A stretch of DNA of 64,000 nt from Lytechinus pictus (GCF_037042905.1 NC_087258.1:8122001-8186000), one strand, 5' to 3'. Positions 726 to 38,381 are shown, counted from the first letter of the stretch. Translations and numbers: made by a program. The notes: a model not told the origin generated them from the letters alone.

Positions 726-3700
726 CTGAGATGCTTTGACGAGCCCCACAATGCCCAATGGTAGGCAGAACATCATTGTGACGATGACAGCAAATCCAGT
801 ATAATCTCGAATAGGTTGCTGCGAGGGAGCCTGTCTGACCATTCCCTGGTTATGTGGAACATTTTAAATGGGATGGGGGAAATATGATGGAGCAATAAGT
901 TTTGGCATTCATAAAAACCACTTCTTTCTCTTCTTTTGCAATGGAAAAATCTTTTTAAAATAAAATTTGGTGAGCAAAATAGGATCCCGTTTCGTAAACG
1001 AAAGTTACAATTTTGGCAATCATGGCATTATCATGGTAAATACCGTGAAAATTTGAGGTTTTAAATAACTTTTGGCATTTTTTATAGCAGGAATTTTTAA
1101 GCAACGATGGCTTTCTTTTAGCGTGTACTACACATTTATGATGTGAATTCCACATATCAGCAAGCTCTAGCTAATTGATCACACAGAGAAATTGAAATGA
1201 ATTCAGTTAACATAATGTACTTACGGTAACAGTTGCAACAAACAATTACATGGGCGGATCAAGGGGCGGCCCGAGGGCCCCAGGCCCCTCCCCCCCCCCC
1301 CTATTGGCGGAGCAACAAAAAAAGAAAAAAGGGGAAAGAAAGAAAAAAATAAAAAGAAGGGGAAAGGAAGGAGGACAAAAGAAGAGGAAAATAAGAGGAG
1401 GGAGACGAGTGAATAAAATAAGGTCAGGGGAAGACTTGGAAAATGATTTGAAAATATACATTTCATGTCACTTTATAAAATTTTCGCTCGCGCTTCGCAC
1501 TCGCATAGCCTGTTCGATAAGATACATATCTTGCTCAATAGGCTGATATGTAGCTAAAATACCAAGTTTTGAAGTCAATGCATATTTCAGCTCGGACAAC
1601 GAGCTCTTATTATTTTGATTGATTTACAAATTAATTTTTTAAAGTGCTCTGTAAAATGTCCGTTTTATGGTGTAATTATCATTTGCAGCTTTTTGCGCTT
1701 TGTGCTTGCATTATTTGCTTTGCCAAGTCGGCCTACATATTGACTTTGTTTATTCCATAAGATTCTTTATATGTTAATTCTATAACAAACTACTTAAAAT
1801 CGCCCTTTTACGACAGTTTAAAAAAAAATCGTCTCGCGCTTTGCGCTCGCATTAATAGTTAAAGGACAAGTCGACCTCAACAAAAAACGATTTGAATAAA
1901 AAGAGAAAAATTCAACAAGCATAACACTGAAAATTTCATCAAAATCGGATGTAAAATAAGAAAGTTATGACATTTTAAAGTTTCGCTTAATTTCACAAAA
2001 CATTTATATGCACATCCTGGTTGGTATGCAAATGAGGAGACTGATGACGTCATCCACTTACTATTTCTTTTGTATTTTATTATATGAAATATGATATGCT
2101 AATTTTCTCTTCATTGAGAAGTGAAACAGTGATTAATTCCTCCCTGAACATGTAGAATTAGCATTGTTTAATACTACATGGTTCAGACGAGCCGGTCCCT
2201 ATTGTCAAATCTGTAAAAGATGGAATATTGTATAATTCAAACAATAAAAAAACAAAAGAAATAGTGAGTGATAAACATCATCGACTGACTCATTTGCATT
2301 ATACTGAGTTGTACAGATCACTATTTTGTGAGAAATAAGCGAAACTTTAAAATGCCATAACTTTCTTATTTTACATCCGATTTTGATGGAATTTTCAGTG
2401 TTATGCTAGTTTGATTTTCCTCTATTTATTCAAATCAACATTTTGCTGGGGTGGACTTGACCTCTAAAAATATATCAACTCATAAATCTTATTCGTGATT
2501 ACAAAAGTGCTTTAAATATCCAGTCTTCAGGCCATAAATGTCAACAAATTTTTACTCACTAATTAGGCTTATTAAATTTATAAATATGATGATAAAATTT
2601 TAATGAATTCCTAATAACTAAATTGTCCATTTTTTCAGAAAGTTTCATATCGCGTTTAGGGAGAGGAATAGGAAGATATTCATCATTTTCATATGATGAC
2701 AAAATGTCCTTAGGCCTAGAATGTCCAGGTCCTAGGTCAGAATAATAAAAGTTATCAGCTAGTGCTTCGCACTCGCATCATTTATTAAGTGTTATCCACA
2801 TACACTTCACAATTTCCCTACACAGTGCTTTAGATAGTGCTTGAATTCACCCTTTTATACCGGAATATCAAATATTTTCCGCTCGCGCTTCGCGCTTGCA
2901 TTATTGATTTTCATGATATTATTGTATATATTTTACCTTGTACAGAATTTCGCAATTCAGCCTTCGGCTGCGATGAAGTTTTCTTAATAAACCATTTCAA
3001 TTTCAATAAAAATGAAATGTATTCTGAATGCCAAGATTAAATCTAACTCTAAAACACGCGCACACATGTTTATTGATATATGCAGCTTGATCTTTATTCA
3101 AAACGTGCTAAAATTATCCAGTTTGCGCTTGCATCATTAATGTAGGAAGTTCTTTTTACATGATTTAGAAAAAAAATGAATAGTGTCCCATTTTTAGGTC
3201 TGAAATCTCAATTTTTCCGCTTGTCCTTCGCGCTCGCATCAATTGTTTACATTTACACCTATACCGCTTATTTCAAAGAGTGCTTAGAATGCCAATTTTT
3301 TTAGGTCGGAATGTCAAAACATTTTCAGCTCGCGCTTCGCGCTCGCATTATCTAAAAGTTGAAATATGTATCGTCTTAATGGCTAACTGCAAATCGGTCT
3401 TAACATGTCCTTTCTCGATCAAGCCAGAACCAATATTAAAAATTTCTGCTCGCGGTTCGCGCTCGCAGTAATTTGCCACCTTTCGCAATCATCACGGACG
3501 CTAATATTAGGGTCCCCTAACACAAATGTTGACGCTTAATCATACACTTGATTTTTAAGATTGATTGTACATGATAGTCAATAGAATCAAACGTAGAAAG
3601 CTGCTCTACATTCAATGCTAAGATTTGTGTTACAGGGGGGTTACAGGCCCTACAGATCTGCTTTTCGTTTGCAAAATTCTTTCCCGCGACACCCGCGCGC

Positions 3701-5373
3701 CATACATGCATGTATTACGACTGATGGCTGGAGATATTCGAAATGCAGGACCTAAAATAGAATATGAGATGGATAAGAAAGTGGTTTTTCAAACAAATCG
3801 AGTACATATTGAGTGAGGAAAAACTTTCTAAATTAAGGCTTAGATATAGATCATTACAGTCCATCGAATCGATATTGCATTTAATGTGGATTATTGGTGG
3901 ATCTCTGGCAATTGATTCCATGGGTCAGATTACCTCTCTAGCCGAACCATTTCGCATATGTACACAGCGTATGCAATACGTTTGCATGCGGGTTTCTTTT
4001 GTTTCTTTTGTTCACTCCTTCTACACAAACGATACGCCTCTAGCACACGATGTAAAGGGTATTATGTTTTACTTTCCCCAGAAATGGGGGTTAGATTCAA
4101 ATTCCGGGGGGACCACTTCCATTGATGAGTGGATACCAGGCACGACCATGGGGTTTCGAAAAGTACCCTAAACAAGGGAAGCAAGTCTTTTCCCGATTAT
4201 GAAAATGCATCTTTTAACAATTATTTGGCTTGTGAAACCCTACAAGTATTGGAAATATTTCCTTTTTTCAGTATTTTAATCATCGTTTTTGACACCTTTA
4301 TAACGTTACATAGGCCTATACGTAACGTACTTACCCACTCTTTCCCTTTTTACGCGTTGTTGCGCCTGGTATCCACTCTTCAATGAAAGTGGGGCCCCGG
4401 GCGGCCTCTCGAGCTCTGGGAGGAACCAAATGTGGATTTGGAAAGTCGTCCTAAATCGGATACATCGCTGTTACCATAGTAGCAACCCGAATTTTGCACA
4501 CGAAACGCAAATTGAATGTTTCCGTTCCAGATGCGAAACGAAAAAAAATATCATGTCACACAATTTGCATTGCAGGACAGAGTTTTAAGACCATGACGAC
4601 GGGCCCAAAAGTCTCTTCTAAAATCAACTAACGTCGTAAATAAGCGTTCGCGTTCTTCCAACGAAAGGTCGGGATTATCTAGTTACATACGCATCTTGTT
4701 CAGGTTCACAAACATTGCCCAGAATATTCAATTTTCAGGACAAAATACATGAAATTCCAAAAAATTTCAGCTCGCGCTTTGCGCTTGCACTATTCAAATA
4801 GGGCTTATAATGAGATTATTACACTTGTTTATGTTGTTTTATAAGAATAAAGCTAAGAAATGACCGTTAGGACATCGGCGTTTTGCCCCCCCCCCCAAAA
4901 AAAAAAAAAAAAATGGAGGGAAAAGGAAAGGGATAAGTGAAATATATGCCTATAAATTGTCAAATGTTATGTGAAAATCTATCATAAACTTTGATTTTTG
5001 TGATCAAACCCCCTCAAAATTTTTGGCTCATTACGCCACTGAGACAACCCCTTCAAAGAAACAAACAAAAATCAACATTGAGCGGCCGATCGGGGAAAAT
5101 ATGGGTGAAACAAATTCGCCCCCCCCCCCCTATTGGCTGGGGCTGGATCCGCCCTGCAATAATATATCATTATTAAAGGACTAATACATCAAAATAACAT
5201 TGTAATTAAAAAAAAGTCAAAAGGAATATTACATAGGAATGTATCGAAAATGAATATAAAAAGAAAATTATTTTGATATCACTTTTGCTTACGATGAGAT
5301 AGAAGGAGGGGATCATTATGAATACAGAGTTCTGTGTTGTTGCAAACGGTACCACATTTATGTAAATGATTAC

Positions 5374-5406
<33 letters not shown>

Positions 5407-8400
5407 GTGATATTTCATTTAGCGCGCACACCGTCCAGAGACGCTCATGGCGCTAGGCCAGCAACAGTTCCTTTAGATAACAAATATTATATACACGTTC
5501 ATTACAAACAGCTACTTAGATATAAATAGAAATCTTGAGTCACTACAAGTATCATCCTGGAAATTCCCAGCTACATGCCTTTGCATTATCCTCATCGCTT
5601 ATATAAAGTTCTTGTCGAAGCCATGGAATTATCATTATCATCATGTTTTCCGATACGTGAAAAAACGAAGAAAAAATTCGAAGAATTTGATTAATGAAAT
5701 AGGTCTGCTATTAGTGGCCCCTCTCTGTTCACGAAATCCCGTCAGAGACAAACAATAGATATTATTTTATATGGGGTATTTTATGCAGTTTGGCAACAGT
5801 ATATTCATAGAGCTATATTGAACTCTTTCATTGAATACATGATACATTGAATAGAAAATCCTTTCTGAGTGACTTATAGCAAGCAATTCCATTAACATGA
5901 CTTAATACCTTAATACCAGTGAGATTAAGGAATGTATGACGATTGGAATTATAAGATATTCCAACTCACGTGATCCACTAGCTGTGCGGTATTATCGGTA
6001 TCAACTGATTGATTAGAAGGCGGGACTCCGGTTGTGACGTAATTCTTTCGTGGAGGGTAGCCAGAAGAAACTGGGTATCCATTACCGGTAATGGGCATTT
6101 TCCTGTCATTTGTCATGTTTACTTCCGTGGCTGTAAAATATGACAAATTGCAAAATGCTTCACTATTATTGCAAACATTGAAATGTGAGACCAAATGATT
6201 GCACTTGTTGAACAGAATACAAACAAGAATATGGAAACAATTTAAAGATATAGGGTGAATAACAAGACACAACTACGAACTACATTATATTAATCAAAGT
6301 TCTGAAAGTACTAAAATCTAAATGATAAATCTAAATCAAAATCTAAGACTCGATTTTTAGCAAGTGCTTCCCTGTCGTACAATTGGCAGCTATAGTTGCC
6401 CAATAATTTGTTATGTTTAACCAATTTACAGCCAGAAAATCAACTTCATATTTTTTTTCACGTTGTTGTACTGGCAAGGAATCCACAATTCGTTTGATCA
6501 TATAAAAAATTGTGGTTAACATAGACATTTTTTAGTTGTATTTTTGCATCAGTTGTATTTTTGCATCAGTCTTTTAAAGAGTTGATTTCGGATATTGCCG
6601 CGAGCAGAATCAATATTTCCCCCATAAAACACGCGTGATATAGCGGTTGTGTGTAGTAATACACGTACTTCTATGGGTCGAGCAAAATGCGAGTGTGCGA
6701 GGGCATTCAGCTCAGAATTGACCAATGACAGAACGGTACGATGTCTCTCGCCGAGCTATCACTAAACGCTACTCGCCCATTCGCTATTGTTATATGAATA
6801 TTCAAGAAGCAATATACCTATCATCAGGGAAATCCGTTTATGCAAAATAAATTGGATTACTGGGTGGTTTAAGATATTTTAGAAGAGAAAGTGTTGAATT
6901 GTAAAATAATAATAATAGTAATAATAATAGAACAGTTTTTGTATAGCGTATTACACCTTTCTAAGGTCTCAATGCGCGTTAGGAAAAGAAGAAAAGGTGA
7001 GGGGAAACTGCTGAAAATGCTTTGATGATATTATTTTCAGTTAAATAAATATGTTTTCAATGCAGATTTAAATTGCCCAATTCTATCAATTTGCCTTAAA
7101 TTTAGTGTGATACTATTCCAGAGTTCCGGCGCTGCGTGCGCATACCCCCGTTCGCCATAAAACTTTGTCTTAACAACAGGTACGCTACATAAATCCTTAT
7201 GAAGTGATCTAAGATTTTGAACAGATTCATATTTTACAAGTAACTCAGACCGATAAGATGGAGCCATTTTGTCGAACACACTAAAATGAGAGTAGTAAGA
7301 TCTTGAACTTAAAGGGATGGTCCGGGCTGAAAATATATATGTCTAAATAAATAGAGTAAAATTCACAGAGCAAAATGCTGAAAATTTCATCAAAATCGGA
7401 TAACAAATAACAAAGTGGAAATTCGAAGTTTTACTAGGAAGTACTCAAAGAAAAAAGCAAAAGAAAGAAAAGAAAAGATTACAAGGTTAGAAAAAGAAAT
7501 TGTAAATTAGAATAACTACAACAAAGACCAGGTAATAAGAATAGGGGTTCAATTGACATCTTAACAAGAAAAAGAAATGAATTAAAAACAATATATACTA
7601 TTATGTTAATGACGGTAAAAAAAATCAGATCTCGAGCGCCGTGGTTTGAAAGTGGGGAAAAGGAAGCTGCATATTTTTAACAATTGACAGATTCTAATTA
7701 ATGGGAAAAAATGTGTAATTAAAAACTTAAGGTAAATTAAAATATAATCAGTGATGAAAATAGTATTTTAAATGAAATTCGAAGGTTTTATTCATCGTTA
7801 TACGCTAAATCAGAGGCAGGATTATGCAACAATAAATTTTATGTTTTTTCCCCAATAGCTTACCCGAACTAACAAAAAATCGAAGCAATCACTGTGAAGG
7901 AAAAATAAACCAAGGTGATTGTATTGAAATTTTTAGAGAAATGCAACTTAATAAATCCCCGGGGAATGATGGACTGAGCGTCGAGTTTTACATTACATTT
8001 TGGCATGTTGTAGGCGATTTGGTTATTAATGCGCCTATTGTTAGTATGCTATATTAACATGATAAAGAATTATCTCCCTCTCATGGGCAAGCAGTAATTA
8101 CACTAACACTTCAGGGAGATAAAGACCCAATAGTCATTAGCAACTAGAGACCCATTTCACTTCTCAATGTAGATTATAAAATTCTCACTAAGATACTTTC
8201 TAAAAGAATATAAGGAGATTTTGAGTAACATTGTTTCAGTTGACCATGTAGGTTATTGTAAGATTGATTAATGACATGATATTTCATACCTCAAATGTAA
8301 ATAAATCAGGTTATTTATTAGCAATCGATTTTGAAAAGGCTTTCGATTCTATTTCACACGCTTTTCGTCAAAAGGCACTTTGTAAAAGAAAAGTGCAATC

Positions 8401-11400
8401 AGTCCAGGATAGGCCCCATAGAAAAGTGGCTAAATCTTCTTTTTTTTTCCTTTTTTTTTCTTTGGACGGTTCTCGTCTATTCGAGGGTGCTGATTACGAA
8501 TCTGAATGATGCCACTCGTGTAACCTTGAGCATTTTCCGCAAATTGGCAAAATCCAATATGGCCGCCAAAATATGCAAATTACCCATGAAAATCATAAAA
8601 TTGCCCGTGCATTGTCTATAAAATTGTGGTGCAGGAGTGAAATAATCTCGTAAAAAATGATTTGTGACAATTTTTTTATATTCAAAATGGCCGCCATAGA
8701 CGCTTGTTAACTCTATTATGTACAATATGAATGGACTCATTTTTACAAAATTGAGCACTAAAATGCAAGTAATTCTTAGAGTGAAGTAATAAATGAAAAC
8801 ATGATTGCTAACGAAATGTATCATTTGTTATGTCATGTATATGATAATTGATGTATTTTGATATTCAAAATGCCACCAATCCCCCTATTATGTACAATGT
8901 TAATGGGGACAAAAAAAATCACAAGATTGAGTACTAAAATGCATATTATTAACTAGTGGAATACTGAATAAATACATAATTTTTATTTTATTAACAGCCA
9001 CAATTATATATCGTAATATGAATGATAGTTGTAGTGATATTAAAATTAATCAGGAGACTTTTTGATAACCCAATATGCGAAATAGTAGGTCTCACTTAAA
9101 AAAAATAGTGCAGGTATTCTCGTAATTACCAGGCATGCCAGGGTGCCGAGAGAAAACCTAAGACGCTCCATCTCGCACTTAAAATTCTAGCCTTCTAAAG
9201 AATAAAATGAGACTAACTCTGTATATATATATATATATATGCGTCAAATGTAGCACTCAAAGAAGTAATCCTCTGAGTCAGTTAATAAACTTAAACCTTT
9301 ATAATATCTATTGAGGTTAATGAAGTAAAAGTTCTGACACATAAGATTGCGGCGTTAATTTTATTTGCATGTATGTATGTGTTTGTATCTATTACAATTT
9401 TCATCAGACGATTATAGTTTCTCGTTGACTAGTTAATTGCGATCATGCAGTCCATTTCCAAGCTCCCCAACTGTGATCTGTTTGTAATCAAGTAAAGAAT
9501 CGTTACTCCATGTTAAAAAATAAATCATATTTTAAAGCACTTCATAATCGGCACATTCCGAATGCATGATTTATAAATAAGATGAGAGAAAGGCGCTCGG
9601 TTTCAATATTGCAACACGAGGTTAAAACAAATCGTCAAAAAAATAATACTTAAATACCTAAAAGAATATTTAGGTGATAAAGGTGTTTTTAAACAGAGAC
9701 AAGCAGGATGTGTAGGACCGAGGTAGGACTTAAATTGGCAATGGTACTGAAAACAGTGTTTATCAAGACTTTCAGCGTAATACAATTCTTACAGAGCAGG
9801 GTACAGATAAGTTATAAGTTTAAGTTATTACATATCGGTTTTCCAGCTCAACTTCACATTTAAATCATTTAATTTAATGTTATGACCATTTTTTTTTGTA
9901 TTAAGTAGTTTTTATTGACAACTTCAATTCATATACAAAATAAAATATATATAACAAATAGAAGTTTGATGTCTTTACAAATTGATAAATACCTTGACAA
10001 CTTATGAATTTAACATCATTTTTTTTCTTGAATGTTACAATAAAACACAATCATATCAGACATCTTCTAAAACATAATTATAAATAACATTGATAATAAT
10101 AATATGATTAAGAATAAACTTCTACAATAAATTCAACATATTGAAATTTTTTTTTCAGTGTCAAATACACAAAAATAAATCATTAATAAAACCTAACGAA
10201 TTGAAGCCATCAGCATATTTTAAAAAAAAACCCATTGCCTCGGCCTCTTCACTCAAATAAAATCAATCTCAACAACAAACCCAGCCCTGGACCCTACCCC
10301 CATCCCCCCGACCCTCCCTAAAACACCCCCATCCCCTATCCGGTGGAGAGCTGGCTCTGGGCTCCAATAAATGGTCTAATAGTTAAGTTTTCCCATTTAG
10401 AGAAATGGATTGTAAGAGTCCCCCTCTTTGTTGCTAAATTCTTTTCTTCTCTTTGATCCCCCCTAATACTATTTTTTATTTCATTCAATGAAGGAGGTTT
10501 TTTTAATTCTCGGTTTTTGTAAATAAGATATTTAACTAAAATCAAAACATGATTAATTAACTGATATTTACCTTTACTTTTCTCCTGCTTCCCGAAAAGA
10601 ATTTCCTGCCAACTAAATTTATTTATTTCAAAATTTAAACTTCTTGCACACATATCCCAAAGTGATTTTGAAAATTCACAAGTATAAAATAGATGTTCAT
10701 ACGTTTCTTCTTCCTTTTCACAAAATGAGCATAAATTGGTCGAAACAAGACCAAAACGGAAAAGGTGGTGATTAGTGTATATAATATTATGCAAAAGTTT
10801 ATACTGAAACTCCCTTAATCGACTATTCAGTGTGCAATATCTTAGTCTTAAAAATATACTTTCTACTTCCTTATTGGTAAGATCATAATTCGTTCTAATT
10901 TTGTCGAGAATAGAAGGTTTAATGTCATTTTTATTCAACAGCTGTTCGTATATTTCTTTTGATTTTAAAGGAATAAATTAGTTGTTTTCTTACCCAAATT
11001 TAAATCGATTCCAGAGTTATGCTTTGCATTTATTTCGATATTGTTCTTCCAACTAACGGGTAAACAGGCATATATATGCTTGATCTTTTTAACATCATTT
11101 GCATCTAAATTCAAATTAAGAAAATGTGTATCACATTTTAGTTTACCATTATTATCCAAAATATGATGCAATTTATAAACCTCTTTATCGTATAGAATCT
11201 TATCAAATATACAACTACCTTTATATCGAATAAGCTTATTATTAAAAATCACCACTTTCCCAAACTCTGTACTTCTAATATGTCTTATATTTACCCACTC
11301 TTCTAATAAGTCCATGTAAAATTTGGAAGCTGTTACTTTCAATAAACCTGGTATATAGTCACATGAAAATATCAAATCTCCACCCAAATGTTTAGTGGCA

Positions 11401-13908
11401 AAATTAAAGTACTGTTTCCATTTCATATCTTCATCTTTAATTTCGCGATAGCCATGATCGCCTTGGTTGTGTGTCATCTATTCAATATTTGTCACTTTAA
11501 TGTATTTCCTGCACAAAATAATTATCAAACAAGTCACTAGAATTCAGATAAACGGCATTCAATTCAATAAATTTGCAAGCATAACCATTTATCCGCATGT
11601 AGGTTCATTATTTCTGCAAAACATTCTTCAAATGAATAACCTGATTTTTTTTTAATAAAAAGCATTAAATTTAAGGAATGGGCATTCAAAGTAATTTATT
11701 CCATATGTGAGTTCATTATACTAGCAACATTTTTTTCAAATATGTTATTTATGTGTTAAGTAGGTACATGGAAATTAGAAAATGGGCATTCAAAATCAGA
11801 TATTGCATGGCGTGGCAGCTGATTAGTCAAACGAATTTTCGTACAGGCAAGCAGTTTTTTTTTTAGATAAGTGAATTAATTTAAGATATTAAGCAGCAAC
11901 TCACTAAAAAATATGTTGGTTATTCGGCGATTCTATTTCATGTAAAGGTATACTTTACCTGTTAGTAGTATTTGAAATAATGTTATAAATGTACTACATG
12001 TAGAATAATATTTTGTTTTTAATAAAGGCACTGGTTGGTGGTATGGAGCCACCCTTCCACACAGCGAAAACTGCGGTGTTAACCGGTGTACATAGAGGAC
12101 CACACCAGTTATTTTACACCGGTGTTAAATTGACAGTGTTAGTTTAGCACCTATAGGTGTTATTGCAACACCTTTGGTTGTTACATGTACACTCTTTGGT
12201 GTTATATTCAATCTCTAGGGTGTAATTTTAACACCAGAGGGTGTGGTCCTCTATTAAAACCCACTGGTGTCAGTTTTAACACCACAGTTCTTACAGTGCG
12301 AATCCACCATGGTTTACATACAGAGTATGACCCATGAAATTGAATAAATTTGAAAATATGTATAAAAAGGGACATGTCAGTGGCGGATCCACTTTTGAGA
12401 GGCTAAAAAAATGGGGGGGTAGTGGAAGTCCTGGATCCGCCCCTGGGACATGTAATAAAGTTGAAAAGAACAAAAAAGTTAAACAGTAATGAAAATGCCC
12501 ACACGGCACTGTCAGCTGAAAAGGAAGAATATAGAATTGTCCTGAACACCTTTGTAAACAAAACGCAAAACCCTTTGCAAAAGACGCAATGTAAATCATA
12601 CATGGGACCCGGTGCATTAAAAAATGCCATAAAAACTCTAGCTAACAAACTGATGCCACTGAAATGTACACATTAAAAAACTGTGGCAAAACAAAATCCC
12701 AGAATTTTGTTATGGCAAATGTTTTATGCAACGGGTCCCTGATTAATTTTTTTGTGATGAAACCTAAGGACAATGTGGAAATTCAAATTTGAGCTAAACA
12801 AATATCTAATTTAGCCACAATGCATAACAATTCTAATTTTATTATAAATATGTTTATACATTCACTTATCATACACTTATACATTCATACATATGTACAT
12901 ACAGATGCCACACACGAGTTACACATCATTAGTTTGAACTCTCAGAAACGAAATTGGTTGCTCAAGCACTCCTATCGGTCACTGATGAAATTGAATGCAC
13001 GATTCCTAAATTTCATTGCCCACAATTTAGAATTAAAAAGTACATTCGTTAATTTGTAAGACCATTAACAAACATCTTTGCCCTAGAACGAAATCAAAAG
13101 CACATGACAAATATTGAAATTATCAAATTTGAAATAGTCTTGATCATAAATGTTATTATCATTCAATGTACTGGGAACTACTACTCACAAGTTTTTATTA
13201 ACTTTTCTGTAGTTTCCCATTTTCTCTGATATTATTTGTCATTCCTGTACATATTGTATATATATATCATTTCTTTTTATGCTGAGAAAATAAAAAAATT
13301 ATATTTAACTGAACTGAACTGAATTTATTTGAATGGTTATAAATGAATTATAGTGTCTTAACTTGATCCCATTGTCTGATTTTAAAATTTGAATGACCGA
13401 TATCTCCGGGAAAACGATACCGCGTGAATTTGAATGCACACTAATGAATTCAAGTCACTCCTATATGAAATTGGACGGGAAAACCTATATAACCCAAGAG
13501 GTAAAGTTGAAAGGTCTACGTCACATCGATCATAATATAAGAATAAAACAAGCATACAATGTACAAAAAATGACATGTTTGGCTTCCCATAATTTTGATA
13601 CAGAGTTAGACCATGTCCATGGCCTAAGTTAAACCCGACTTCGGAATACGGGTCATTATCTCAATGGTTTATCATATTACTTTTTTTTACAAACCCTTCA
13701 AAAAATTATATTAAAAATAATCGTCATAAATCAATTCCTTCCAAAATATCAACCTTCTTATTTATATCAACAGGAGTAAGCTATCAGAATGATGGTTCTG
13801 TAAAACGACCAATACTGTATATAGATCCAGAATTAATATCGCTAGATTCTATGTCTTTTGGATTAACAGCGACAACTAGGAATTCAAAGGAATCTACTTA
13901 CTGGACAT
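726..13908 (-). CDS. CD225/dispanin (IFITM/PRRT1-like) membrane protein, paralog A, 3'-partial (last exon left of the window)
   Basis: Exons 13902-13908 (ATGTCCA|GTAAGT), 5970-6130, 726-845, all GT-AG and in phase. Translation MSTTEVNMTNDRKMPITGNGYPVSSGYPPRKNYVTTGVPPSNQSVDTDNTAQLVDH/GMVRQAPSQQPIRDYTGFAVIVTMMFCLPLGIVGLVKASQ. The DY...FCLPLGIVG pattern is the CD225 intramembrane segment. Collinear with paralog B. Confidence 0.85.
1863..2463. mobile_element. Kolobok-like MITE (AGGACAAGTC termini), nested in 1249-5156
   Basis: TTAA|AGGACAAGTC...GACTTGACCT|CTAA with long imperfect inverted arms. Same family as 26037-26624 (opposite orientation) and 63797->64000. Confidence 0.8.
4103..4400. mobile_element. 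MITE with CCGGGGGG-CACTTCCATTGA.GAGTGGATACCAGG termini
   Basis: Inverted ends CACTTCCATTGATGAGTGGATACCAGG / CCTGGTATCCACTCTTCAATGAAAGTG. Same family as 46112-46570 and 52418-53076. Confidence 0.7.
6906..7308 (-). mobile_element. 3' end of an L2/CR1-group LINE
   Basis: ORF 7037-7279 ends YGERGYAHAAPELWNSITLNLR...FKSALKTYLFN, the typical C-terminal motif of this group, followed by a short 3' UTR and (TAT)n tail. Confidence 0.75.
7415..8382 (+). mobile_element. Decayed L1/Tx1-like LINE ORF2 fragment (linker + N-terminal RT)
   Basis: Reads KSPGNDGLSVEFY, RPISLLNVDYKILTK and YLLAIDFEKAFDSISH, with stops and frameshifts. Confidence 0.85.
9888..11443 (-). mobile_element. 5'-truncated L1/Tx1-like LINE 3' end (zf-RVT region, 3' UTR, polyA)
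   Basis: ORFs 10965-11477 and 10336-10938: LREFQYKLLHNIIYTN...CSFC...ETYEHLFYTC. G-rich tract after the stop, AATAAA near 9910, A-tail near 9888-9897. Confidence 0.85.
12060..12298. mobile_element. ~240-bp palindromic MITE (CACAGC.AAAACTG.GGTGTT family)
   Basis: Near-identical copy at 18543-18780; imperfect terminal inverted repeats. Confidence 0.8.
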
Positions 13909-19934: not shown

Positions 19935-19974
<40 letters not shown>

Positions 19975-21683: not shown

Positions 21684-24112
21684 ACTTCTTCTTCTTCCTC
21701 TGGAAACAGTACAGTCCACCGTCTGGTGTATTGTCGTACTGGTGAAGTGCAGCGTGCAAGTGTATGTACATTATCCGATAAAAAATTGCTTACAGCGTGC
21801 AAGTAAAAACAACCAACGTTATTAACGGAGCTGGGTCTTTTGTACCTCTTGTTTAAAGATGTGTAGAGAGGTACAATTAACTGTGCTGTTGGGGAGGAAG
21901 TTCAAAAGTCTTATCGAATCTGGGAAGAAGCCCCGGGAAGAAGCTCCTCTGGTAGACAAGTGTTCTGGCAAAGGTAACAAAGATCTTTTGAGAATGACCT
22001 CTATGCATGGATGTGGATGGAGTGAGGAAGGTAGGTGGGATGTCAATGAGTGAGTTGGTAATACAGTAGATCATCACCAACTTGGCCTGTGCCCTACGCT
22101 CTTGTAAAGTTGGCCATTTGAGCTGGTTCAGCATGGCTGCTACACTTCTTGTTCTACAGTGATCATTACAGACGAAGCGTGCATAGCGTCGCTGCACCAT
22201 TTCAAGCTTTTTCATATTTGCTTGCGTGTGAGGGTCCCATATTATGCTGGCATACTCCATGATTGGTTGCAGGATATCTTTGTAGCACAGTTCCTTGACC
22301 TTTCTTGGACATGGCCGGATATCTCTCTGGAGGAAGGCACGTGTGGAGTTGGCCTTTTTGGTTACAGCATTTATATGTTGATTCTAGCTGAGGTTCCTCT
22401 GCAGCTCAACTCCAAGATACTTCGCTGTACTTTTATCAGATATAGTCTGTCCATGGATGAAGTAAGGCTTGATGATAGGTTTGCGCTTATTTGTGACATG
22501 AAGTACTTGACACTTCTGTGGATTGAATTCCATCAGCCAATCATGCTCCCATCGTTGCAAGGAGTCAAGGTCCTCTTGGAGATGAATGGCATCTTCTGTC
22601 TTGACGTTGGCATAAACCATGCAATCATCAGCAAAGAGCCTTACTGTTGAGTTGTTGGAGAGATACTCTGGCAGGTCATTGATGAAGATGAGAAAGAGCA
22701 TTGGCCCGAGGACACTGCCTTGCGGAACGCCTGATGTTACTTGGCTGGTGTTGGAGATGGATCCGTCCAGTACAACGCGTTGGGTCCTATTACTCAGAAA
22801 GTCAGCTATCCAATGGTGAGTGTGATCTCGGATTCCATGAAATTGAAGCTTGTGTAACAGGCGTCCATGCGGTACTTTGTCAAATGCTTTAGAGAAGTCA
22901 AGGAGTATCATATCCAGTTGACCCTTGTCATCAATGGTTCTAGCAACATCTTGAACGGCAAGAATCAGCTGAGAAACACAGGATCGTTTCTTGCGAAAAC
23001 CGTGTTGAGCATCAGACAATACATTGTGGTCTTCAAGGTGGGTCATGACGCCACTAAAAACGATGTGCTCTAGAATCATACAGGTCACAGATGTCAGAGA
23101 GATAGGCCTGTAGTTCTCTGGTTTACTACGGTCGCCTTTCTTGAAGATGGGGACAATGTTAGCCGTCTTCCATTCAGCAGGGATGATACCTTGATCTAGG
23201 GAGGCTTGAAAGAATATGGAGAATATTGGTGTCAATTCGGTGGCAAGTCCCCTTAAAAGTCTGGCAGGAATTTCGTCAGGACCAGATGCCTTATAAGATA
23301 TCAAGCTCAGACAGAATCTTATGGACCCCTGGGGGAGAGATGATTATGATCCATTGATGGGTAAGGACTAGGCCCTTTGTCTCTCAGGCTGGTCATATCT
23401 TCATCATGGTTGAATACCGATGAGAATTGTTGGCTTAAAATGTTGGCCTTAGAGAGACTGTCAGCAGTAGTCAGACCATCATGAGACTTTAATGGTGCTA
23501 CACCTGAGGCATCATGGCGCTTGCTGTTTACAAAACTCCAGAAACGCTTTGGATTACTTGTGGTGTCTGGACTGACAGTATCTGTCAAGTACTTGATGTA
23601 AGCTTGTTTGCAGGCAATTCTGGAATGTCTCTTGACCTGCTGGTACTTCTCAAAGTCAGCTTGGTCATTGCTGGTCTTCGCTCTGTTATAGTACATTTTT
23701 TTCTTTCTTGAGAGCCGTTTGACAGAGCGAGTTATCCAGGGCTGGTTGTATCTAGTTGATGACATCTTTGAAGGTACATGCTTATCCAGCAGCTTTGTCA
23801 GATTTGTTTTTATGTCAAGCCACATGTCTTGTACAGAGCTAGAAGTACAGTATTGACCAGTAAAGCTGTTCTGGAATAGGCAATCCTTCTTCAGGTTCTC
23901 TTAGTCTGCCTGCTTCCAAAGGTAGATCTTTCTCTTCACGGGTTTGCGTCTGCTAGCTTTAATAGAGGACACCACATACACAATATCGTGATCACCAATT
24001 CCAGGAAGGGGAGAACACTTGTCAACAAGGGTAGGTCTATTCGTAAAGAAGAGGTCAAGAAAACTGTTCTGCCTTGTTGGAAAATCTACAATTTGTTCAA
24101 GCCCACACAACT
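21684..24112 (-). mobile_element. 5'-truncated, frameshifted CR1/L2-group (jockey-like RT) LINE
   Basis: APE end LDLFFTNRP...GDHDIV; RT KASGPDEIP, NYRPISLTS, LDFSKAFDKVPH, GVPQGSVLGP, LFADD; broken into five or more ORFs; (GAA)n 3' tail near 21685. Confidence 0.92.
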
Positions 24113-32362: not shown

Positions 32363-33443
32363 TACGAAAGGCCAATCGTGGTGTTCGTAACTGGTCGTGC
32401 ATGGGAGCGAGGTACTGTCGTGTTGGGATCGGTAATTATAAGAAGGGAAGCGTAATAAGGAAACTTTGGAGAAAGTTATACAGTTGAAATCACTAGGTAT
32501 TTAATCATCAATATTCAGCTACAGTTCGAAGTACATGAAGATTCAGATATCATAGGAGACGATGAATATACAATAATTTAGAAGTATCAGATTGAGATTG
32601 TGAAGTTAAATTAATATTCGATGGACGTCTAAGTCTTGAAGTCAGTCAGTCTCTATCTGGGTGAGTGTGGGTCTAGTATTTCTTTTGTATTCTATATTCT
32701 CTAATAATCAAGAAGTCTTATTTATATCATTAGTTTTGGGGGTGTAACAATTTAAGGTGGGAGTGATCTCTAAACTTGATCTGATTGGTCTACAGGTAAC
32801 TGTCTATCAAACTTTCTCTGGTATAAGGGGTGTGGTGTTGCTCTGTGCAGGTGATTGGGGCTGGAAGTGTGAGTCATACTTCTTCCTTGAAGTTAGCTTA
32901 CGTCACTGAGGGTTGGTCTTTTTATGGTCAAGGTTTAGGAGTTAAATGGTATTGGTGGTTTGAGAATGCTTAGATGACATTGGGGGAGTTTGTAAACAAG
33001 TGAAGGTGAATGACTGAAAGGATAACAGGAAGTTAAATACATACTACATAACAGTACTATAATCTAGCTCGATTTGATCATGTTGATAACCATTTCGACA
33101 TCGTCAGTTCAATGCTCATTATAGCATTTCCATAATGAGTTTCGGGATAAATTATCCAACGAAACATCATTTTCAAAGACAGAATTATTTCATCATCTGA
33201 TATGACAAAGCAATAAAGTCTGATAACAGGAAGTTAAATACATACTACATAACAGTACTATAATCTAGCTCGATTTGATCATGTTGATAACCATTTCGAC
33301 ATCGTCAGTTCAATGCTCATTATAGCATTTCCAGGTGCACAGGTCAAATCCTTCCGTCAGTCACGAGTATATCACGATTATCCTTGTCATATAGACTCCA
33401 TGGTTGATCATGGCGGTTTGCGGATCTCAACGCATTGATTTAT

Positions 33444-36400
33444 TCAGTATACCCCAATGAGTACAAAATAATATATTCCCGCCAACGCGGAAACGATGCA
33501 TCCACACACTATCCCAGCTATGGCGAAGCCTAGGGCGCAGCGAGACGAAGAACGAGCACCATCGTCATCTCCATACAATTGCTTGTCCTGTGCCTGTGAA
33601 GGTAGACAAGGAGAGAAAAATATTTTAATACCCTTACTTTTCAACATGTTCAATTTAAGCGAATGTCTATTGGCCACCGAATTATTTCATAATCCTCTAA
33701 CCATTTTAGCATGAGTTTCGGGATAAATTATCCAACGAAACATCATTTTCAAAGAAATAATTATTTTATCATCTGATATGACAAAAGCAATGAAGTCTGA
33801 CTAAATGCCAGATTATAAATATGAAATTCGAAAAAAAAGCAGAAAATGATATCATATAAATATTTCCGTCAACACCACCCCCACCCCTAAATTAAAATTT
33901 ATAATTCAATAAATAAGTAAATAGATATTTCAAAAAGTAAATAAATAAATAAATTAATAAATTAATAGATTAATGAATGAATAAAGTTAGATGAATAAAT
34001 ATTAATTAAAATTAATAATAAAAAACTTTTATTATGTTACTATCGTAAAAGATCATGACCAAAATAGTTTACCTCTTTTTAATTTGATTGTTGAGGCATA
34101 ACTCTCAAATCAAATCCCCTACTTGAGTTAGTCTGCAGGCACAGACCCTTGTTTCTCGCGATTCTCATAGTGTATAACGCAGAGTCTTAATAAGTGAGAC
34201 TAGATTCACTATGTATTGAGACTGGCTCTTAGACAAAGACATAGGCCCGTATTCTGAACTCGGGTTTAAATTAAACTCTGGTTTAAAGTTGTGGTTTAAC
34301 TATGGAGAGCCAATTGGAGCACAAATCCCTTACAATACACATTCAATAACTTTATTAACTCATATGACACCCAAATTTTTCATAATTGTCTAGAAATGAT
34401 AACTTAAGTATTTTTCTTCATTATAAAAGCAAAAAGGAAACAAAATAGTAAACATAAAAAATATACAATATTAAGAGAATTTTTGAACTTTTGGCTCCCC
34501 ATAATTTTAGCACAGAGTTAGACCATGGTCTAAGTTAAACCTGACTTCTGAATACGGGCCATAGTCTTGGGAGTCTAGTCTTCACTCTAGACCTGTTATT
34601 GGTTGAAGTGTCAAAAACAATATGAGCCTGTGTCTGCATACTAAACTTGAGTGGCGAATCTGTTTAATGTTGATATCATTTGTTGTGTTACTTTCTTGCG
34701 TGTATCGAACCCACAACTCACTCTTGAATTCATGAAATAGGCAGTTAGACCGAACGGGAGACAACAACACAATGTGACCATCAGAGCGAGGCGGGAATAG
34801 TCAGGAATGTGCTGCCTGGGAGCTCCCGAAAACGCCTTGGTTGATCGAGGTGCAGTCTAATGAATAAAACAATTTAAAGTATTAAAAATTCAATCAAATT
34901 AGATGTAAAACTTGCGGAAATGCGGTTGTGCCTTTGAAGTCCTTTATATATGGACAGAGTAGAGCCGCACTTTCATTGTATTGGTCAAAGAAATTGGCCG
35001 TGACAGTTCGTCATATACAGAAGAAACCTTCTGGCACAGTTATACCCCTATACTTATTGCATGTTTTGATGGGTTGAAGGGGCAACCAAGGCTCATTATT
35101 ATAATGATTACGGGATTTAGATTATGATAAAACTTGAAACAGAATGCTCTGGAATTTTAAAGTGATGGTGCGGGCTGAAAATATTTATATCTAAATAAAT
35201 AGAGTAAAATTCAGAAAGCTAAATGCTGAAAATTTCATCAAAATCGGAAAACAAATAACGAGTTATTAAATTTAAAAAAAATTGTGAAAACAGTTTAATG
35301 CAAATCGTCATGAATATTCATTAGGTGGGCTGATGATGTCACATCCCCACTTTCCTTTTTCTTATGTTATTACATGAAACCATAATTGTTTCATTTTTTC
35401 ATACATTTGTAAATGATGTGTCTCCATTATGAAATAAGTTGCGGCAATAAATAACTAATGCACTTAATCAGTTGTCAATCCCATTGTTTTAGTTCTTGAA
35501 AAAAAAATCATATAATAAAATACAAAAGGAAAGGTTGGGATATGACATCATCAGCCCACCTAATGAATATTCGTGAAGACATGCCTAGAACTGTTTCACC
35601 GGAATAATGCGAAACTTAAAAATTCAATAACTTTGTTATTTCTTATCCGATTTTGATCAAATTTTCAGCATTTTTACCATCCCTTTAACACAAATCGGAC
35701 GCAAATAAGTGAATATGCAACGACCAAGCTAATACCATTTCCCCGTTTGTTTTAATCAATAATGTTTAGTTTTATGGAATGATGATTAGTCATATTTCAT
35801 GCCCAAAGGACGCAAAATATGATTGAATACTGATATACTGCTCAAAATCACTACTGATGAAATTTAATCGTTTTAAGGGAGATTTACATACACACGTATG
35901 AAGTTATTATATCATACAGAAATCCGAGACGTATCATCATTACCTTTATTGCATATTAATTTTTGCTTGCTTTATTCTTATGATACTATATTCTGATACT
36001 GTATTATGATACTGTATTCTTATTCGTATTCTTATGATACTATTCCAACCTAGCATGGGTGCCGTTTTAAGCGGCAATGTTGTTGATTACTACTTATAAT
36101 TCAATTATTCCACTTACGTGTACAACTGTCACCTGTGATTGTGGGGGCTGGACCGGGATGTGATTGGTCGATTGTGCGTAAGAAGGCGGAGCTCCGCTCT
36201 GTACCCCATGTCCTTGTGTGTATCCATGTAATGCTTGATCTCGTGATGGCGTGTGCATCATCGCTTGTTGTGAATCCAACCTCACCTCCACCATGCCAAG
36301 ATGCTGCTTTTCTGCTTCAGACATTTGAACCTCTGTGGCTATACATCGAACAGAAATAAATTTTCGGTTTCATTTTATTTTCATTTCAATGTGTGTTATA

Positions 36401-38381
36401 TTTCAAAACCATTATGTAATATGAAATTAGGGAATGATACATCATTTTACAGTTATTCCAAACAGACCGTTCCTACACAGAGAGGTATAAGGACTGGGAT
36501 CAAGCTTCACTCCTTTGATGCTATGCTCAACACCGCCGATAACCTATGCGCTAATCTGCATCTTTTAGCAGGTGGCTTGATAATAGAAAAGTGTTTTTTT
36601 TAATAGGTGTTAAATAAAGGCATCATGTAATTGTATCTTGGCATCTGTTGGCTGATATCTTTAATGATTTCTCATCAAGTTTCAGATGTAAAATGACTTT
36701 CACGAGCGAACGCAAATTTTCGAAATTCCATACTATTTTCTACTTTAAAAAAAAAAGCAAACACACAAGCAAAATACCTTAACATCGAATATTGGAAAGC
36801 ATCGAGTGACATGACAGGACCTTAAAATGTATGCAAATTATCAATGGAACACACTCAAATATTGAATTTGTGAAAGGATCTAATTTATTTTGTTCTAATC
36901 CGACACACAGATAATCAGATGGGCATAGTGCGAAACTTGATAAACTGTTTGGTGTCCTGTTTATAACACAAGCCATTAGTGAGCTTCATGATTTTATCTA
37001 CAATTTGTGTTTATTAGTTTGAAACTGGTACTGGGCTTCTGAAAATCACCGCAGCAGGAAAACAACTTTCCGCATGGAAGTGCAATGCCAGGTGGTATGT
37101 ATGGTATGGTATTTATTAAATCATGCATCGCAGTTACAAAGACTGAATTGCACATGGATATACAATATTAAAAATGTACAGCCTCAAAACAGTGGAATTA
37201 TTTACATAATTAAAAAGTAAACATATATCACAGACTGAATGCAATAAATAACATACTATTGCGTATTAAACCATACATATTATTTACGATAAAAGAGTAA
37301 TGTAAAACACACCCATAATTAAAACAAAGAAGAGGAAGTAGAATAAGAAGAAGAAGAAGAAGAAGAAGAGAAAAAAAAGGAGAAAAAGAGGAAGAAAAGA
37401 AGACGAAGAAAAAGAAGAAGGAGAAGGGAAGAAGAAGGAGGAGGAGAAAAAGAAGATGGAGAAGAAGAAGACAATGAAAAAGAAAAAAAAAGTTGAAGCA
37501 GAATAACAAGAAGATAAAGATCATATAATATATTGCAAAATGAGAATACAGAATACTGATATGTAAAAGGTAAAATTTTTAATTTGGTATTCATGGAAAG
37601 GCAATTATAAAATTCATTTTAAAAATTCAAATAGACATGTTTAGAAATAGAATTATTACGTAAGGGTAAAGTTCATTTACCAGTCAGTTTTTCTTGATCA
37701 GTATAATTTAGAAATTAGTTGAATCGCAGCCGGTACAAAGATTGGTATCTACTTTTGAATCATGTTGCCTATTTCATTAATGAATTATGGTATACACATT
37801 GTTAAAACATTATAGACCGAATTTCAATATGAAAAATAGTTTGACAAACATAAGCAGAAAATAGAATATGGCAAAAAAGTATAAATGGTATAGCCCTGCA
37901 AGATGTAAGGACATAAATACTAGATAAGTAATCATAAATTTAAAAAGTGGTAAAAAATTGAAATATTAAGATTATGTTTTATCATTGCTGGTTTAAAAGC
38001 CTTACCAAATAGGGTAAGGCGCTCTTTTTATAGCGTTCTGAAATATCCCATTTTAAACTTTGAGACCATGAATATAGGCCATAGATTTTAACCCCCATCT
38101 AAAGATTTGTTCACATGTTCAATCCGTTACCATGTTCACGATTCCGATCTCCATATGATTAGAATATACAACATTGTCATGTGATTAAAATCAACAACTA
38201 TAGAAAAATGATAAAAACATAGAAAAGATGAGACGATAATAAGACAAATAAGTACATTGTCTCTAAATGTGAAAATAAAAGTGTTTGGATTATAAAACTA
38301 TAATAATCGGCTATAAGAAATGAAAATATGTACACAAATTTGAAATAAGCGCACTTTGAAATTATGATACTTACATGTCAT
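33444..38381 (-). CDS. CD225/dispanin (IFITM/PRRT1-like) membrane protein, paralog C, complete, 170 aa
   Basis: Exons 38375-38381 (ATGACAT|GTAAGT), 36118-36338, 34722-34856, 33444-33593 (513 nt, in frame, ends TGA). MTSTEVQMSEAEK...GAPPSYAQ...; HIPDYSRLALMVTLCCCLPFGLTAYFMNSR; AQDKQLYGDDDGARSSSRCALGFAIAGIVCGCIVSALAGIYYFVLIGVY. Same intron phases (1,0,0) as B. Confidence 0.9.
34243..34560. mobile_element. MITE with GGCCCGTATTCTGAA termini
   Basis: GGCCCGTATTCTGAAC...CTTCTGAATACGGGCC; right-end fragment also at 13578-13653. Confidence 0.7.
35161..35684. mobile_element. Kolobok-like MITE (AGGGATGGT family)
   Basis: TTAA|AGTGATGGT...ACCATCCCT|TTAA; related fragments at 7313-7415 and 14480-14680. 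Confidence 0.75.
37321..37520. repeat. Purine-rich (GAA/GGA)n low-complexity tract in intron 1 of paralog C
   Basis: Direct reading. Confidence 0.9.

What the first reader, a model, noticed from the sequence alone, without database searches (positions are those of the whole stretch)
726..38381. Tandem cluster of three IFITM/dispanin-like genes in an invertebrate, diverged at the family's regulatory motifs
Seen: three same-strand CD225 genes with matching exon phases; B and C carry a GxxxG loop (GDDEG, GDDDG). They differ at functional sites: the cysteine cluster is FC in A and B but LCCC in C, and PPxY is present in B and C but is PPSN in A. Known: vertebrate IFITMs are tandemly expanded antiviral fusion inhibitors regulated by S-palmitoylation at these cysteines, by NEDD4 binding to PPxY, and by GxxxG oligomerisation. 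Inference: an independently expanded, IFITM-analogous membrane-fusion-control or innate-immune locus in an animal probably lacking interferons. This is the best candidate for an undescribed system here.
Basis: partly seen in the sequence, partly recalled or inferred. Interest (0 to 1): 0.72.

Follow-up and report, generated by a model that had tools for sequence, protein, structure and literature searches.

The report
Sea urchin CD225/dispanin gene cluster
Three neighbouring genes in the painted sea urchin encode small CD225/dispanin membrane proteins; they are already annotated, belong to a sea-urchin-specific branch of a known family, and one matches a purple-urchin gene recorded as switched on by bacterial challenge, so they are a reasonable but untested immune candidate rather than a new system.

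Summary
The window is Lytechinus pictus. On the minus strand lie three CD225 (PF04505) genes, in transcription order C, B, A, each with a 7-nt first coding exon and then phase-0 introns. A spliced RNA contig confirms every junction of C. The GDDEG/GDDDG loops, FC versus LCCC, and PPSY versus PPSN are all as described. A's last exon is off the window.

- The genes are not undescribed. A and B are RefSeq LOC129275948 and LOC129276297, and sea urchin dispanins were catalogued in 2012.
- C belongs with S. purpuratus "DD186 protein, upregulated upon bacterial challenge", a cDNA that has a GenBank entry and a RefSeq record. This is the only immune evidence, and it comes from a record name.
- In my tree the C and A/B clades are sisters within echinoids, so the expansion is independent. 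The same C-B-A order occurs in L. variegatus, and S. purpuratus has at least five copies.
- The genes are not IFITM-subfamily members. Their exon structure is that of DSPC/DSPD1, and their nearest named or solved relative is PRRT1.
- PPxY, the Cys cluster and GxxxG are the consensus of their relatives. C keeps the consensus, A and B have lost cysteines, and A has lost the PPxY tyrosine and evolves almost neutrally (dN/dS 0.91).

Verdict: new members of a known kind, moderate interest.

The parts
33103..38468 (-). Gene C, in the clade of S. purpuratus DD186. 170-aa CD225 protein. Exons 38468-38375 (ATG at 38381), 36338-36118, 34856-34722, 33593-33444 (stop), with 3'UTR reaching at least 33103.
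   Evidence: Spliced 740-nt RNA contig in run X1 with exactly these junctions. Translation. Pfam CD225 on exons 2 and 3. 88% identical to L. variegatus LOC121428195 and 69% to S. purpuratus LOC115924685 (P0013), which shares a 90%-identity cluster with DD186 NP_999653.2.
16695..20790 (-). Gene B = LOC129276297 (P0001, 157 aa). Coding exons 20790-20784, 19638-19475, 17903-17784 (alternative acceptor at 17921 adds NVPHNQ), 16859-16695.
   Evidence: Pfam CD225. RNA-type runs X1-X4 hold 16-17% of the sampled words of 16000-21999; this is suggestive only.
726..13908 (-). Gene A = LOC129275948 (P0003, 147 aa), incomplete in the window. Coding exons 13908-13902, 6130-5970, 845-726. The last exon (loop GDNEG plus second helix) lies beyond the left end.
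   Evidence: The A/B homology blocks are 643-917/17695-17975 (89%), 5587-6365/19097-19879 (77%) and 13881-14089/20762-20969 (83%).
36178..36189 (-). PPSY (PPxY) in the disordered N-terminal region of C. The equivalent sites are PPSY in B at 19531-19520 and PPSN (tyrosine lost) in A at 6023-6012.
   Evidence: PPxY is present in 35 of 47 aligned relatives.
34761..34772 (-). LCCC cysteine cluster in the first hydrophobic helix of C. A and B have a single Cys (FC) at the same place.
   Evidence: The alignment shows CC or CCC before LPFG as the consensus of relatives.
33558..33572 (-). GDDDG (GxxxG) in the loop of C, just after the conserved phase-0 intron. B has GDDEG at 16838-16824.
   Evidence: G111 and D112 of B are nearly invariant in 47 relatives.
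10339..11477 (-). Retroelement fragment (zf-RVT) inside intron 1 of gene A. It is not part of the genes and explains the long intron.
21880..23825 (-). Retroelement fragment with a reverse-transcriptase domain (RVT_1) between B and C.
   Evidence: E 4e-39.

Best explanation
This is a tandem, same-strand cluster of three CD225/dispanin genes of Lytechinus pictus, in transcription order C, B, A. It belongs to an echinoid-specific branch of the family.

Shown or predicted:
- Each protein has a roughly 75-residue N-terminus with no predicted structure, proline-rich and usually carrying one PPxY. This is followed by the CD225 domain: a first hydrophobic helix kinked at a proline and carrying 1-3 cysteines, a short charged loop with GDxxG, and a second long helix.
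- C is the older type. It belongs to the clade that holds S. purpuratus DD186, which its RefSeq record calls upregulated upon bacterial challenge, and it keeps the consensus CCC and PPxY.
- A and B are a younger pair that lost two cysteines.
- A has also lost the PPxY tyrosine and evolves almost neutrally.

Inferred mechanism, from what is published for IFITM3, PRRT2 and TUSC5: the proteins oligomerise through the loop GxxxG and sit in endomembranes or the plasma membrane, anchored by S-acylation of the cysteines. They would modulate vesicle trafficking or fusion, possibly through SNARE contacts. They would be sorted and turned over through NEDD4-type WW-domain ligases that bind PPxY. Under this reading, C at least would be used by coelomocytes during a response to microbes.
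For: - Identity: Pfam CD225 on exon pieces; RefSeq proteins of A and B with precomputed PF04505.
- Gene model of C: confirmed by a spliced RNA contig.
- Family anatomy: the AF2 model of B has no predicted structure in residues 1-78 (pLDDT mostly below 55) and helices at 79-89, 91-110 and 113-156.
- Conserved intron between the two helices plus an extra N-terminal exon, as PMC3282796 describes for S. purpuratus and for DSPC/DSPD1.
- Clades: C + L. variegatus LOC121428195 + the S. purpuratus DD186 group, support 100/100. A/B + L. variegatus + S. purpuratus copies, 96/90. The two clades are sisters (92/74), with a Diadema sequence outside them (87/89).
- Same C-B-A order in L. variegatus. At least five same-strand copies within about 130 kb in S. 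purpuratus.
- Immune hint: the RefSeq name of NP_999653.2. The DD185 clone number is attributed to Rast et al. 2000, which suggests the same screen.
- Selection: L. pictus versus S. purpuratus dN/dS 0.18-0.25. L. pictus versus L. variegatus: B 0.39, C 0.46, A 0.91. A versus B: 1.05.
- Mechanistic precedents: GxxxG oligomerisation in IFITM3 and PRRT2; SNARE-like loop in CD225 proteins; the CC motif as the palmitoylation site.
Against: - No functional or expression-by-condition data exist for L. pictus.
- The immune link rests on a record name for a S. purpuratus paralogue group, and I could not read the source paper.
- Two rRNA-depleted RNA runs showed almost no reads on C's exons, so expression is not general. 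The tissue of the positive run is unknown because the ids are coded.
- The C clade lacks the arginine six residues before the GxxxG that most relatives have. That is the position I take, from my own unverified recollection of the IFITM3 sequence, to match the central arginine of the SNARE-like motif. SNARE binding may therefore not apply to C.
- No NF-kB or ISRE-type motif excess upstream.
- Palmitoylation, NEDD4 binding and oligomerisation are all inferred from vertebrate homologues.
Confidence: 0.6

Rival explanations
1. These are ordinary trafficking or neural dispanins of the PRRT1/SynDIG type with no role in immunity. The cluster would be a neutral local duplication, and the DD186 label an incidental differential-display result.
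For: - NCBI names the echinoderm relatives PRRT1-like, PRRT1B and PRRT2-like.
- The only solved structure matched by sequence is PRRT1, 9zks_M, E 3.9e-9.
- Atlas neighbours are PRRT1 and SynDIG1 clusters.
- Purifying selection at long range, dN/dS about 0.2.
- PMC3282796 finds invertebrate dispanins closest to DSPC/D.
Against: - No one-to-one orthology with any vertebrate member. The one vertebrate sequence obtained (fish SYNDIG1L) falls elsewhere in the tree.
- Copy number changes between urchin genera.
- The RefSeq record states induction by bacterial challenge.
- C is present in one RNA run and nearly absent in two others.
Confidence: 0.25
2. These are true functional analogues of IFITM1-3: restriction factors that directly block fusion of enveloped viruses, with the paralogues tuned by palmitoylation and NEDD4.
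For: - Shared CD225 domain, GxxxG loop, cysteines in the first helix and N-terminal PPxY.
- Tandem lineage-specific expansion and elevated dN/dS between young paralogues, about 1.
- Immune-induction label on DD186.
Against: - All of those motifs are the consensus of the relatives or are shared across the family, not IFITM-specific.
- The exon structure differs from the two-exon IFITMs.
- The recorded stimulus is bacterial, not viral.
- The segment before the cysteines in B is uniformly hydrophobic on inspection, not amphipathic like the helix that IFITM3 needs (for that requirement). I did not quantify this.
- dN/dS near 1 rests on few substitutions (6-28) and fits relaxed constraint equally well.
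Confidence: 0.1
3. The motif differences mostly reflect decay of a redundant copy. Gene A would be on its way to becoming a pseudogene rather than being a regulatory variant.
For: - A versus its positional orthologue in L. variegatus has dN/dS 0.91, against 0.39 for B and 0.46 for C over the same species pair.
- A alone lost the PPxY tyrosine, while its L. variegatus counterpart keeps PPSY.
- A's introns are swollen by retroelement and repeat insertions.
Against: - The reading frame and all splice sites of A that lie in the window are intact.
- RefSeq predicts a full 147-aa protein with GDNEG and a second helix.
- Only 92 codons could be compared.
- This rival explains A only, not the cluster.
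Confidence: 0.35

Closest known systems
S. purpuratus DD186 (NP_999653.2; cDNA protein AAF78206.1/Q9NC83) and its paralogues LOC115924685 and LOC589896
   Same: Same clade as gene C (100/100). Same exon structure, CCC cluster, GDDDG loop and PPxY (PPAY). It also sits in a same-strand CD225 cluster next to A/B-type genes.
   Different: S. purpuratus has three or more C-type copies and L. pictus has one in this window. Overall amino-acid identity is 64-66%. Induction by bacteria is recorded only for the S. purpuratus gene.
PRRT1/SynDIG4 (dispanin DSPD1) and the SynDIG1/TMEM91 group (DSPC)
   Same: PRRT1 is the only PDB match by sequence (9zks_M, E 3.9e-9, over the CD225 domain). The extra N-terminal coding exon and proline-rich N-terminus match. 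NCBI's automatic names for echinoderm relatives point the same way.
   Different: Much shorter N-terminus (about 75 versus about 200 residues). No orthology shown. Vertebrate members act at synapses with AMPA receptors, for which nothing speaks here.
IFITM1-3 (dispanin DSPA)
   Same: CD225 domain, cysteines in the first helix, GxxxG in the loop, N-terminal PPxY, tandem lineage-specific duplication, and a possible link to infection.
   Different: IFITMs have two coding exons, and in PMC3282796 they form a subfamily (DSPA) found only in vertebrates. The shared motifs are family-wide. No interferon system is known in echinoderms (my own knowledge). I could not obtain an IFITM sequence from any tool, so there is no direct tree.
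PRRT2 and TRARG1/TUSC5 (DSPB)
   Same: GxxxG-dependent oligomerisation and a SNARE-like loop are documented for them. A and B keep the arginine six residues before the GxxxG.
   Different: DSPB genes have two exons and are tetrapod-restricted. The C clade has Q or K instead of that arginine.

Membership tests
CD225/dispanin superfamily (Pfam PF04505) | Significant match to the CD225 profile | tested here: met
   Exon 2 pieces of A, B and C score 27.2, 30.1 and 26.8 bits. Exon 3 pieces of B and C score 25.0 and 19.6 bits. The cut-off for a whole protein is 27.1. Whole RefSeq proteins P0001 and P0003 carry PF04505.
CD225/dispanin superfamily (Pfam PF04505) | Two hydrophobic helices separated by a short loop | tested here: met
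   The AF2 model of B has helices 79-89/91-110 and 113-156 with a break at G111-D112. Model confidence is moderate (pLDDT 64.7).
CD225/dispanin superfamily (Pfam PF04505) | Conserved splice site in the loop between the two helices (PMC3282796) | tested here: met
   A phase-0 intron sits between ...KASE|ARN... in B and ...NSR|AQD... in C. The junction in C is confirmed by RNA. The feature is described.
CD225/dispanin superfamily (Pfam PF04505) | Cysteine motif in the first helix, and an aspartate flanking that helix | tested here: met
   DY precedes the helix in all three genes. C has CCC. A and B have one Cys, a reduced form of the motif.
IFITM subfamily (dispanin DSPA) | Only two coding exons (PMC3282796; definition discussed in PMC3424830) | tested here: not met
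   Each gene has four coding exons, including an N-terminal exon as in DSPC/DSPD1. Literature.
IFITM subfamily (dispanin DSPA) | Falls inside the vertebrate IFITM clade in a phylogeny | not testable with these tools
   No IFITM sequence was returned by any search. Indirect evidence: the nearest named relatives are PRRT1/SynDIG-like, and the literature places invertebrate dispanins nearer DSPC/D.
IFITM subfamily (dispanin DSPA) | Amphipathic helix before the cysteines, required for antiviral action | not tested
   The corresponding stretch of B (YTVFAVIVTILF) is uniformly hydrophobic on inspection. No hydrophobic-moment calculation was made.
IFITM subfamily (dispanin DSPA) | Induction by interferon or infection | not testable with these tools
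   The only evidence is the RefSeq name of S. purpuratus DD186, 'upregulated upon bacterial challenge'. No ISRE or NF-kB motif excess upstream. The run ids are coded, so tissues are unknown.
DSPC/DSPD1-type dispanins (SynDIG1, TMEM91, PRRT1) | Additional exon coding for the N-terminus | tested here: met
   described for S. purpuratus dispanins.
DSPC/DSPD1-type dispanins (SynDIG1, TMEM91, PRRT1) | Orthology to a vertebrate member | tested here: inconclusive
   PRRT1 is the only PDB match. The single vertebrate sequence available (fish SYNDIG1L, P0267) groups with an Asterias protein, not with A, B or C. The alignment is short and several branches are long.
Echinoid DD186 group | Monophyly with NP_999653.2 and shared cluster context | tested here: met
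   Gene C sits within a 100/100 clade. CD225 clusters with the same strand and order occur in S. purpuratus and L. variegatus.

The most novel reading that the evidence does not exclude
Echinoids, which have no known interferon, independently built an infection-responsive CD225 cluster. In this reading it acts like IFITMs, controlling fusion or maturation of pathogen-containing compartments in coelomocytes. The paralogues would be set to different turnover and membrane anchoring by gain or loss of the PPxY tyrosine and of acylatable cysteines. The near-neutral dN/dS between young copies would then reflect diversifying selection by pathogens.
Probability: 0.15. Interest if true: 0.65.

Novelty: new member of a known kind. 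Interest (0 to 1): 0.35.

Why it matters
CD225 proteins regulate membrane fusion in antiviral defence (IFITM3), neurotransmission (PRRT2) and glucose transport (TRARG1). What the ancestral protein did is an open question. An echinoid-specific cluster whose members differ naturally at the cysteines and at PPxY, and which includes the counterpart of a bacterial-challenge-induced transcript, would be a convenient natural series for testing those motifs. L. pictus can be genetically manipulated (my own knowledge). As it stands, this is an annotated member of a catalogued family with one old, unverified expression label.

Tried and rejected
- **Tree with IFITMs.** The profile search of 1.84 billion representatives returned only its best 150. 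The 19 I checked by name were all echinoderm or unnamed, and none was more than about 57% identical to a PRRT1 fragment. A broad-profile word search returned mostly bacterial CD225 proteins and one fish SYNDIG1L. No IFITM sequence could be obtained, so direct placement was not possible.
- **Structure search.** Foldseek of the AF2 model of B against the PDB gave nothing below E = 2. A helical hairpin is uninformative there.
- **Literature.** Searches for DD186, for the phrase in the RefSeq name, for IFITM plus echinoderm, and for PRRT plus coelomocytes found no relevant paper.
- **Promoter scan.** A scan for NF-kB, ISRE, GAS, GATA and Ets motifs in 1.5 kb upstream of each gene showed little: only GAS-like sites upstream of B (4 against 0.85 expected from simple shuffles) stood out, and I give no weight to that.
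- **Raw RNA reads.** Runs X19 and X20 gave almost no coverage of C's exons, so they say nothing about its splicing. The high depths in its introns are repeats.
- **Left flank of gene A.** I did not fetch the L. pictus assembly around gene A, because that stretch would overlap the N run at 452-642. I used L. variegatus and S. purpuratus for context instead.
- **Extra copies in the window.** Rejected: tblastn finds none.
- **Acidic ORFs at 105-842 and 17610-17921.** Rejected as coding extensions. They are translations of an intronic trinucleotide repeat that follows a GT donor.
Full report
**Source and gene models**

A word search with B's exon 2 returned RefSeq proteins of Lytechinus pictus at 100% identity: LOC129276297 (P0001), which is gene B, and LOC129275948 (P0003), which is gene A. 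All three genes lie on the minus strand.

By translation and splice-site inspection the coding exons are:

| Gene | Coding exons | Note |
|---|---|---|
| A | 13908-13902, 6130-5970, 845-726 | last exon off the left end |
| B | 20790-20784, 19638-19475, 17903-17784, 16859-16695 | RefSeq uses an upstream acceptor at 17921 |
| C | 38381-38375, 36338-36118, 34856-34722, 33593-33444 | 5' exon runs to 38468 |

Every border is AG/GT. The 7-nt first coding exon ends in phase 1, and the other introns are phase 0.

A 740-nt contig from RNA run X1 joins 38375|36338, 36118|34856 and 34721|33592, which confirms C's model. A second contig carries the 3'UTR to 33103.

**Family assignment**

Pfam CD225 (PF04505) matches the exon-2 and exon-3 pieces of the genes even when each is scanned alone. 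tblastn with A, B, C and a L. variegatus relative finds no other CD225 exon in the 64 kb. A's off-window exon has GDNEG according to RefSeq.

**What is already known**

- PMC3282796 (2012) defined the dispanin family. [quoted passage not shown]
- The same paper found that the classified S. purpuratus genes share the extra N-terminal exon of the DSPC/DSPD1 subfamilies, whereas IFITMs (DSPA) and DSPB have two exons.
- It also found that invertebrate dispanins resemble DSPC/D more than DSPA/B.
- GxxxG is shared by IFITM3, PRRT2 and TUSC5, and it mediates oligomerisation.
- A SNARE-like loop has been described for several CD225 proteins.

**Relatives**

A profile of the A/B group, searched against 1.84 billion representatives, gave 4059 hits. 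The representative closest to C is P0027 (L. variegatus LOC121428195, 88% identical). The next is P0013 (S. purpuratus LOC115924685, 69%).

P0013's 90% cluster also holds NP_999653.2, named "DD186 protein, upregulated upon bacterial challenge". The related cDNA protein AAF78206.1/Q9NC83 is in the same clade. The neighbouring clone number DD185 is attributed to Rast et al. 2000 in PMC3342357. I infer, but could not verify, that DD186 comes from the same screen of challenged coelomocytes.

Other echinoderm relatives carry automatic names: PRRT1-like, PRRT1B, PRRT2-like, TUSC5-like, and once IFITM3-like. This inconsistency fits the absence of clear vertebrate orthology. The only solved structure matched by sequence is PRRT1 (9zks_M, E 3.9e-9). 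Atlas neighbours are PRRT1, SynDIG1 and echinoderm or mollusc CD225 clusters.

**Phylogeny and synteny**

I built an IQ-TREE tree of 26 proteins with 157 aligned columns and bacterial CD225 proteins as outgroup.

- C groups with L. variegatus LOC121428195 and four S. purpuratus DD186-type proteins (support 100/100).
- A and B group with three L. variegatus and two S. purpuratus proteins (96/90).
- The two clades are sisters (92/74), with one Diadema protein just outside them (87/89).
- Asteroid, ophiuroid, holothurian and crinoid proteins, and the one vertebrate sequence I could obtain (fish SYNDIG1L), lie elsewhere.

L. variegatus has the same three genes in the same order and strand: C-type, then a 157-aa B orthologue, then P0002 at A's position with a similarly long intron. 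S. purpuratus has at least five same-strand copies within about 130 kb. Their order is A/B-type, DD186, then about 75 kb on, C-type, C-type (P0013), A/B-type (P0006), followed by an FMN-dependent dehydrogenase gene. The expansion is therefore echinoid-specific and still changing in copy number.

**Motifs in context**

In an alignment of 47 relatives:

- PPxY is present in 35 of them, and the first proline of B's motif is at least 90% conserved.
- The consensus of the first helix is CC(C)-LPFG.
- GDxxGA is nearly universal.

C therefore shows the consensus state. A and B have lost two cysteines. A, L. variegatus P0005 (PPSH) and S. purpuratus P0006 (PRTY) have each lost PPxY.

Most relatives, including A and B, have an arginine six residues before the GxxxG. 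From my own recollection of the IFITM3 sequence, that position matches the central arginine of the published SNARE-like motif. The C clade has Q (Lytechinus) or K (S. purpuratus) there.

**Rates**

Nei-Gojobori estimates:

| Comparison | dN/dS |
|---|---|
| L. pictus vs S. purpuratus | 0.18-0.25 |
| L. pictus vs L. variegatus, gene B | 0.39 |
| L. pictus vs L. variegatus, gene C | 0.46 |
| L. pictus vs L. variegatus, gene A (92 codons) | 0.91 |
| A vs B | 1.05 |
| S. purpuratus C-type paralogues vs each other | 0.98-1.21 |

For the L. pictus versus L. variegatus pairs, dS is about 0.08-0.12. Substitution counts are small (6-28). These numbers show elevated rates in young copies and in A, but they cannot separate relaxed constraint from positive selection. 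dS between S. purpuratus copies (0.03-0.08) is within that species' known heterozygosity (my own knowledge). Part of its copy number could therefore be haplotype duplication in the assembly.

**Structure**

AlphaFold2 on B with the 47-row alignment gives pLDDT 64.7. The N-terminus (1-78) has no predicted structure, and the helices are 79-89, 91-110 and 113-156, with the break at G111-D112. Foldseek against the PDB found nothing meaningful.

**Expression**

- C is assembled as a spliced transcript in run X1 at a word depth of about 11.
- C's exons have almost no reads in the two rRNA-depleted raw runs X19 and X20 (about 6% of each run was read).
- X15 holds unspliced contigs with no mismatches, so it looks like DNA.
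- Runs X1-X4 hold 16-17% of the sampled words of the B region.
- Run ids are coded, so tissues and treatments are unknown.

**Conclusion**

The finding is real and well observed. The locus is a lineage-specific cluster within a known, catalogued family, and its genes are already annotated. It fails the testable IFITM-membership feature, exon structure.

The idea that it works like IFITMs, or serves immunity, is open. It is supported only by the record name of a S. purpuratus member of C's clade and by the birth-and-death pattern of the cluster.

The scan holds one other note of a CD225 gene on another piece of this genome (s1-325083), which I did not examine.

Noticed in passing
window 17903-17921 (B) and 845-863 (A), minus strand: B has two usable acceptors 18 nt apart. 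RefSeq uses the upstream one, which adds NVPHNQ. In A the upstream AG is destroyed (TTTAAA instead of TTTAGA), so only the short form is possible, as in its RefSeq protein.
   Followed up: partly
window 36118-36133, minus strand: C's exon ends ...CAG|GTGACAGTTGTACAC|GTAAGT, giving two donors 15 nt apart. L. variegatus isoform X2 lacks exactly the five residues VTVVH. The X1 contig uses the downstream donor.
   Followed up: partly
window 128-449 (+ N run 452-642) and 17616-17768: A trinucleotide (CAT/ATC) repeat lies just inside intron 2 of both A and B. It creates long stop-free Asp/Glu-rich frames (ORFs 105-842 and 17610-17921) that look like coding extensions but follow a GT donor.
   Followed up: yes
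window 19520-19531: In B the PPSY is followed by QPV, so the tyrosine also fits a YxxPhi sorting signal overlapping PPxY, as I recall for IFITM3's PPNYEML (my own recollection). C (YAQS) does not fit. This could be chance.
   Followed up: no
window 33575-33593 (C loop) versus 16841-16859 (B loop): The C clade has Q or K where A, B and most relatives have Arg, six residues before the GxxxG.
   Followed up: partly
window 10339-11477 and 21880-23825, minus strand: Retroelement remnants: zf-RVT inside A's intron 1, and RVT_1 (E 4e-39) between B and C. Other dispersed repeats shared with 26-31 kb, 41-42 kb and 63.8-64 kb.
   Followed up: partly
window 34200-34600 and 35200-35800: The introns of C contain repeats with very high depth on both strands in all four runs. 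These are expressed or abundant transposable-element families, not C transcription.
   Followed up: no
window 42413-42926 and 56832-57709: Tandem repeats of 163 bp (3.2 copies) and 234 bp (3.8 copies).
   Followed up: no
window 45146-60690: Another first-stage note (s1-329315) describes a beta-propeller + HYR + GPI-like gene upstream of C. I did not examine it. No CD225 exon lies there.
   Followed up: no
L001 and L003 (S. purpuratus AAGJ06000016.1, 16.81-16.94 Mb): The RefSeq DD186 protein matches exon 1 of the L001 gene best (96%) but exon 3 of the P0013 gene best (94% against 78%). This suggests allelic or paralogue mixing, gene conversion, or haplotype duplication in the assembly.
   Followed up: partly
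(protein searches): A broad profile built from the eukaryotic hits scores many bacterial CD225 proteins (Actinomycetota, Bacteroidota; often fused to zinc-ribbon or GYF_2 domains) as highly as animal ones. This fits the bacterial presence noted in PMC3282796.
   Followed up: no
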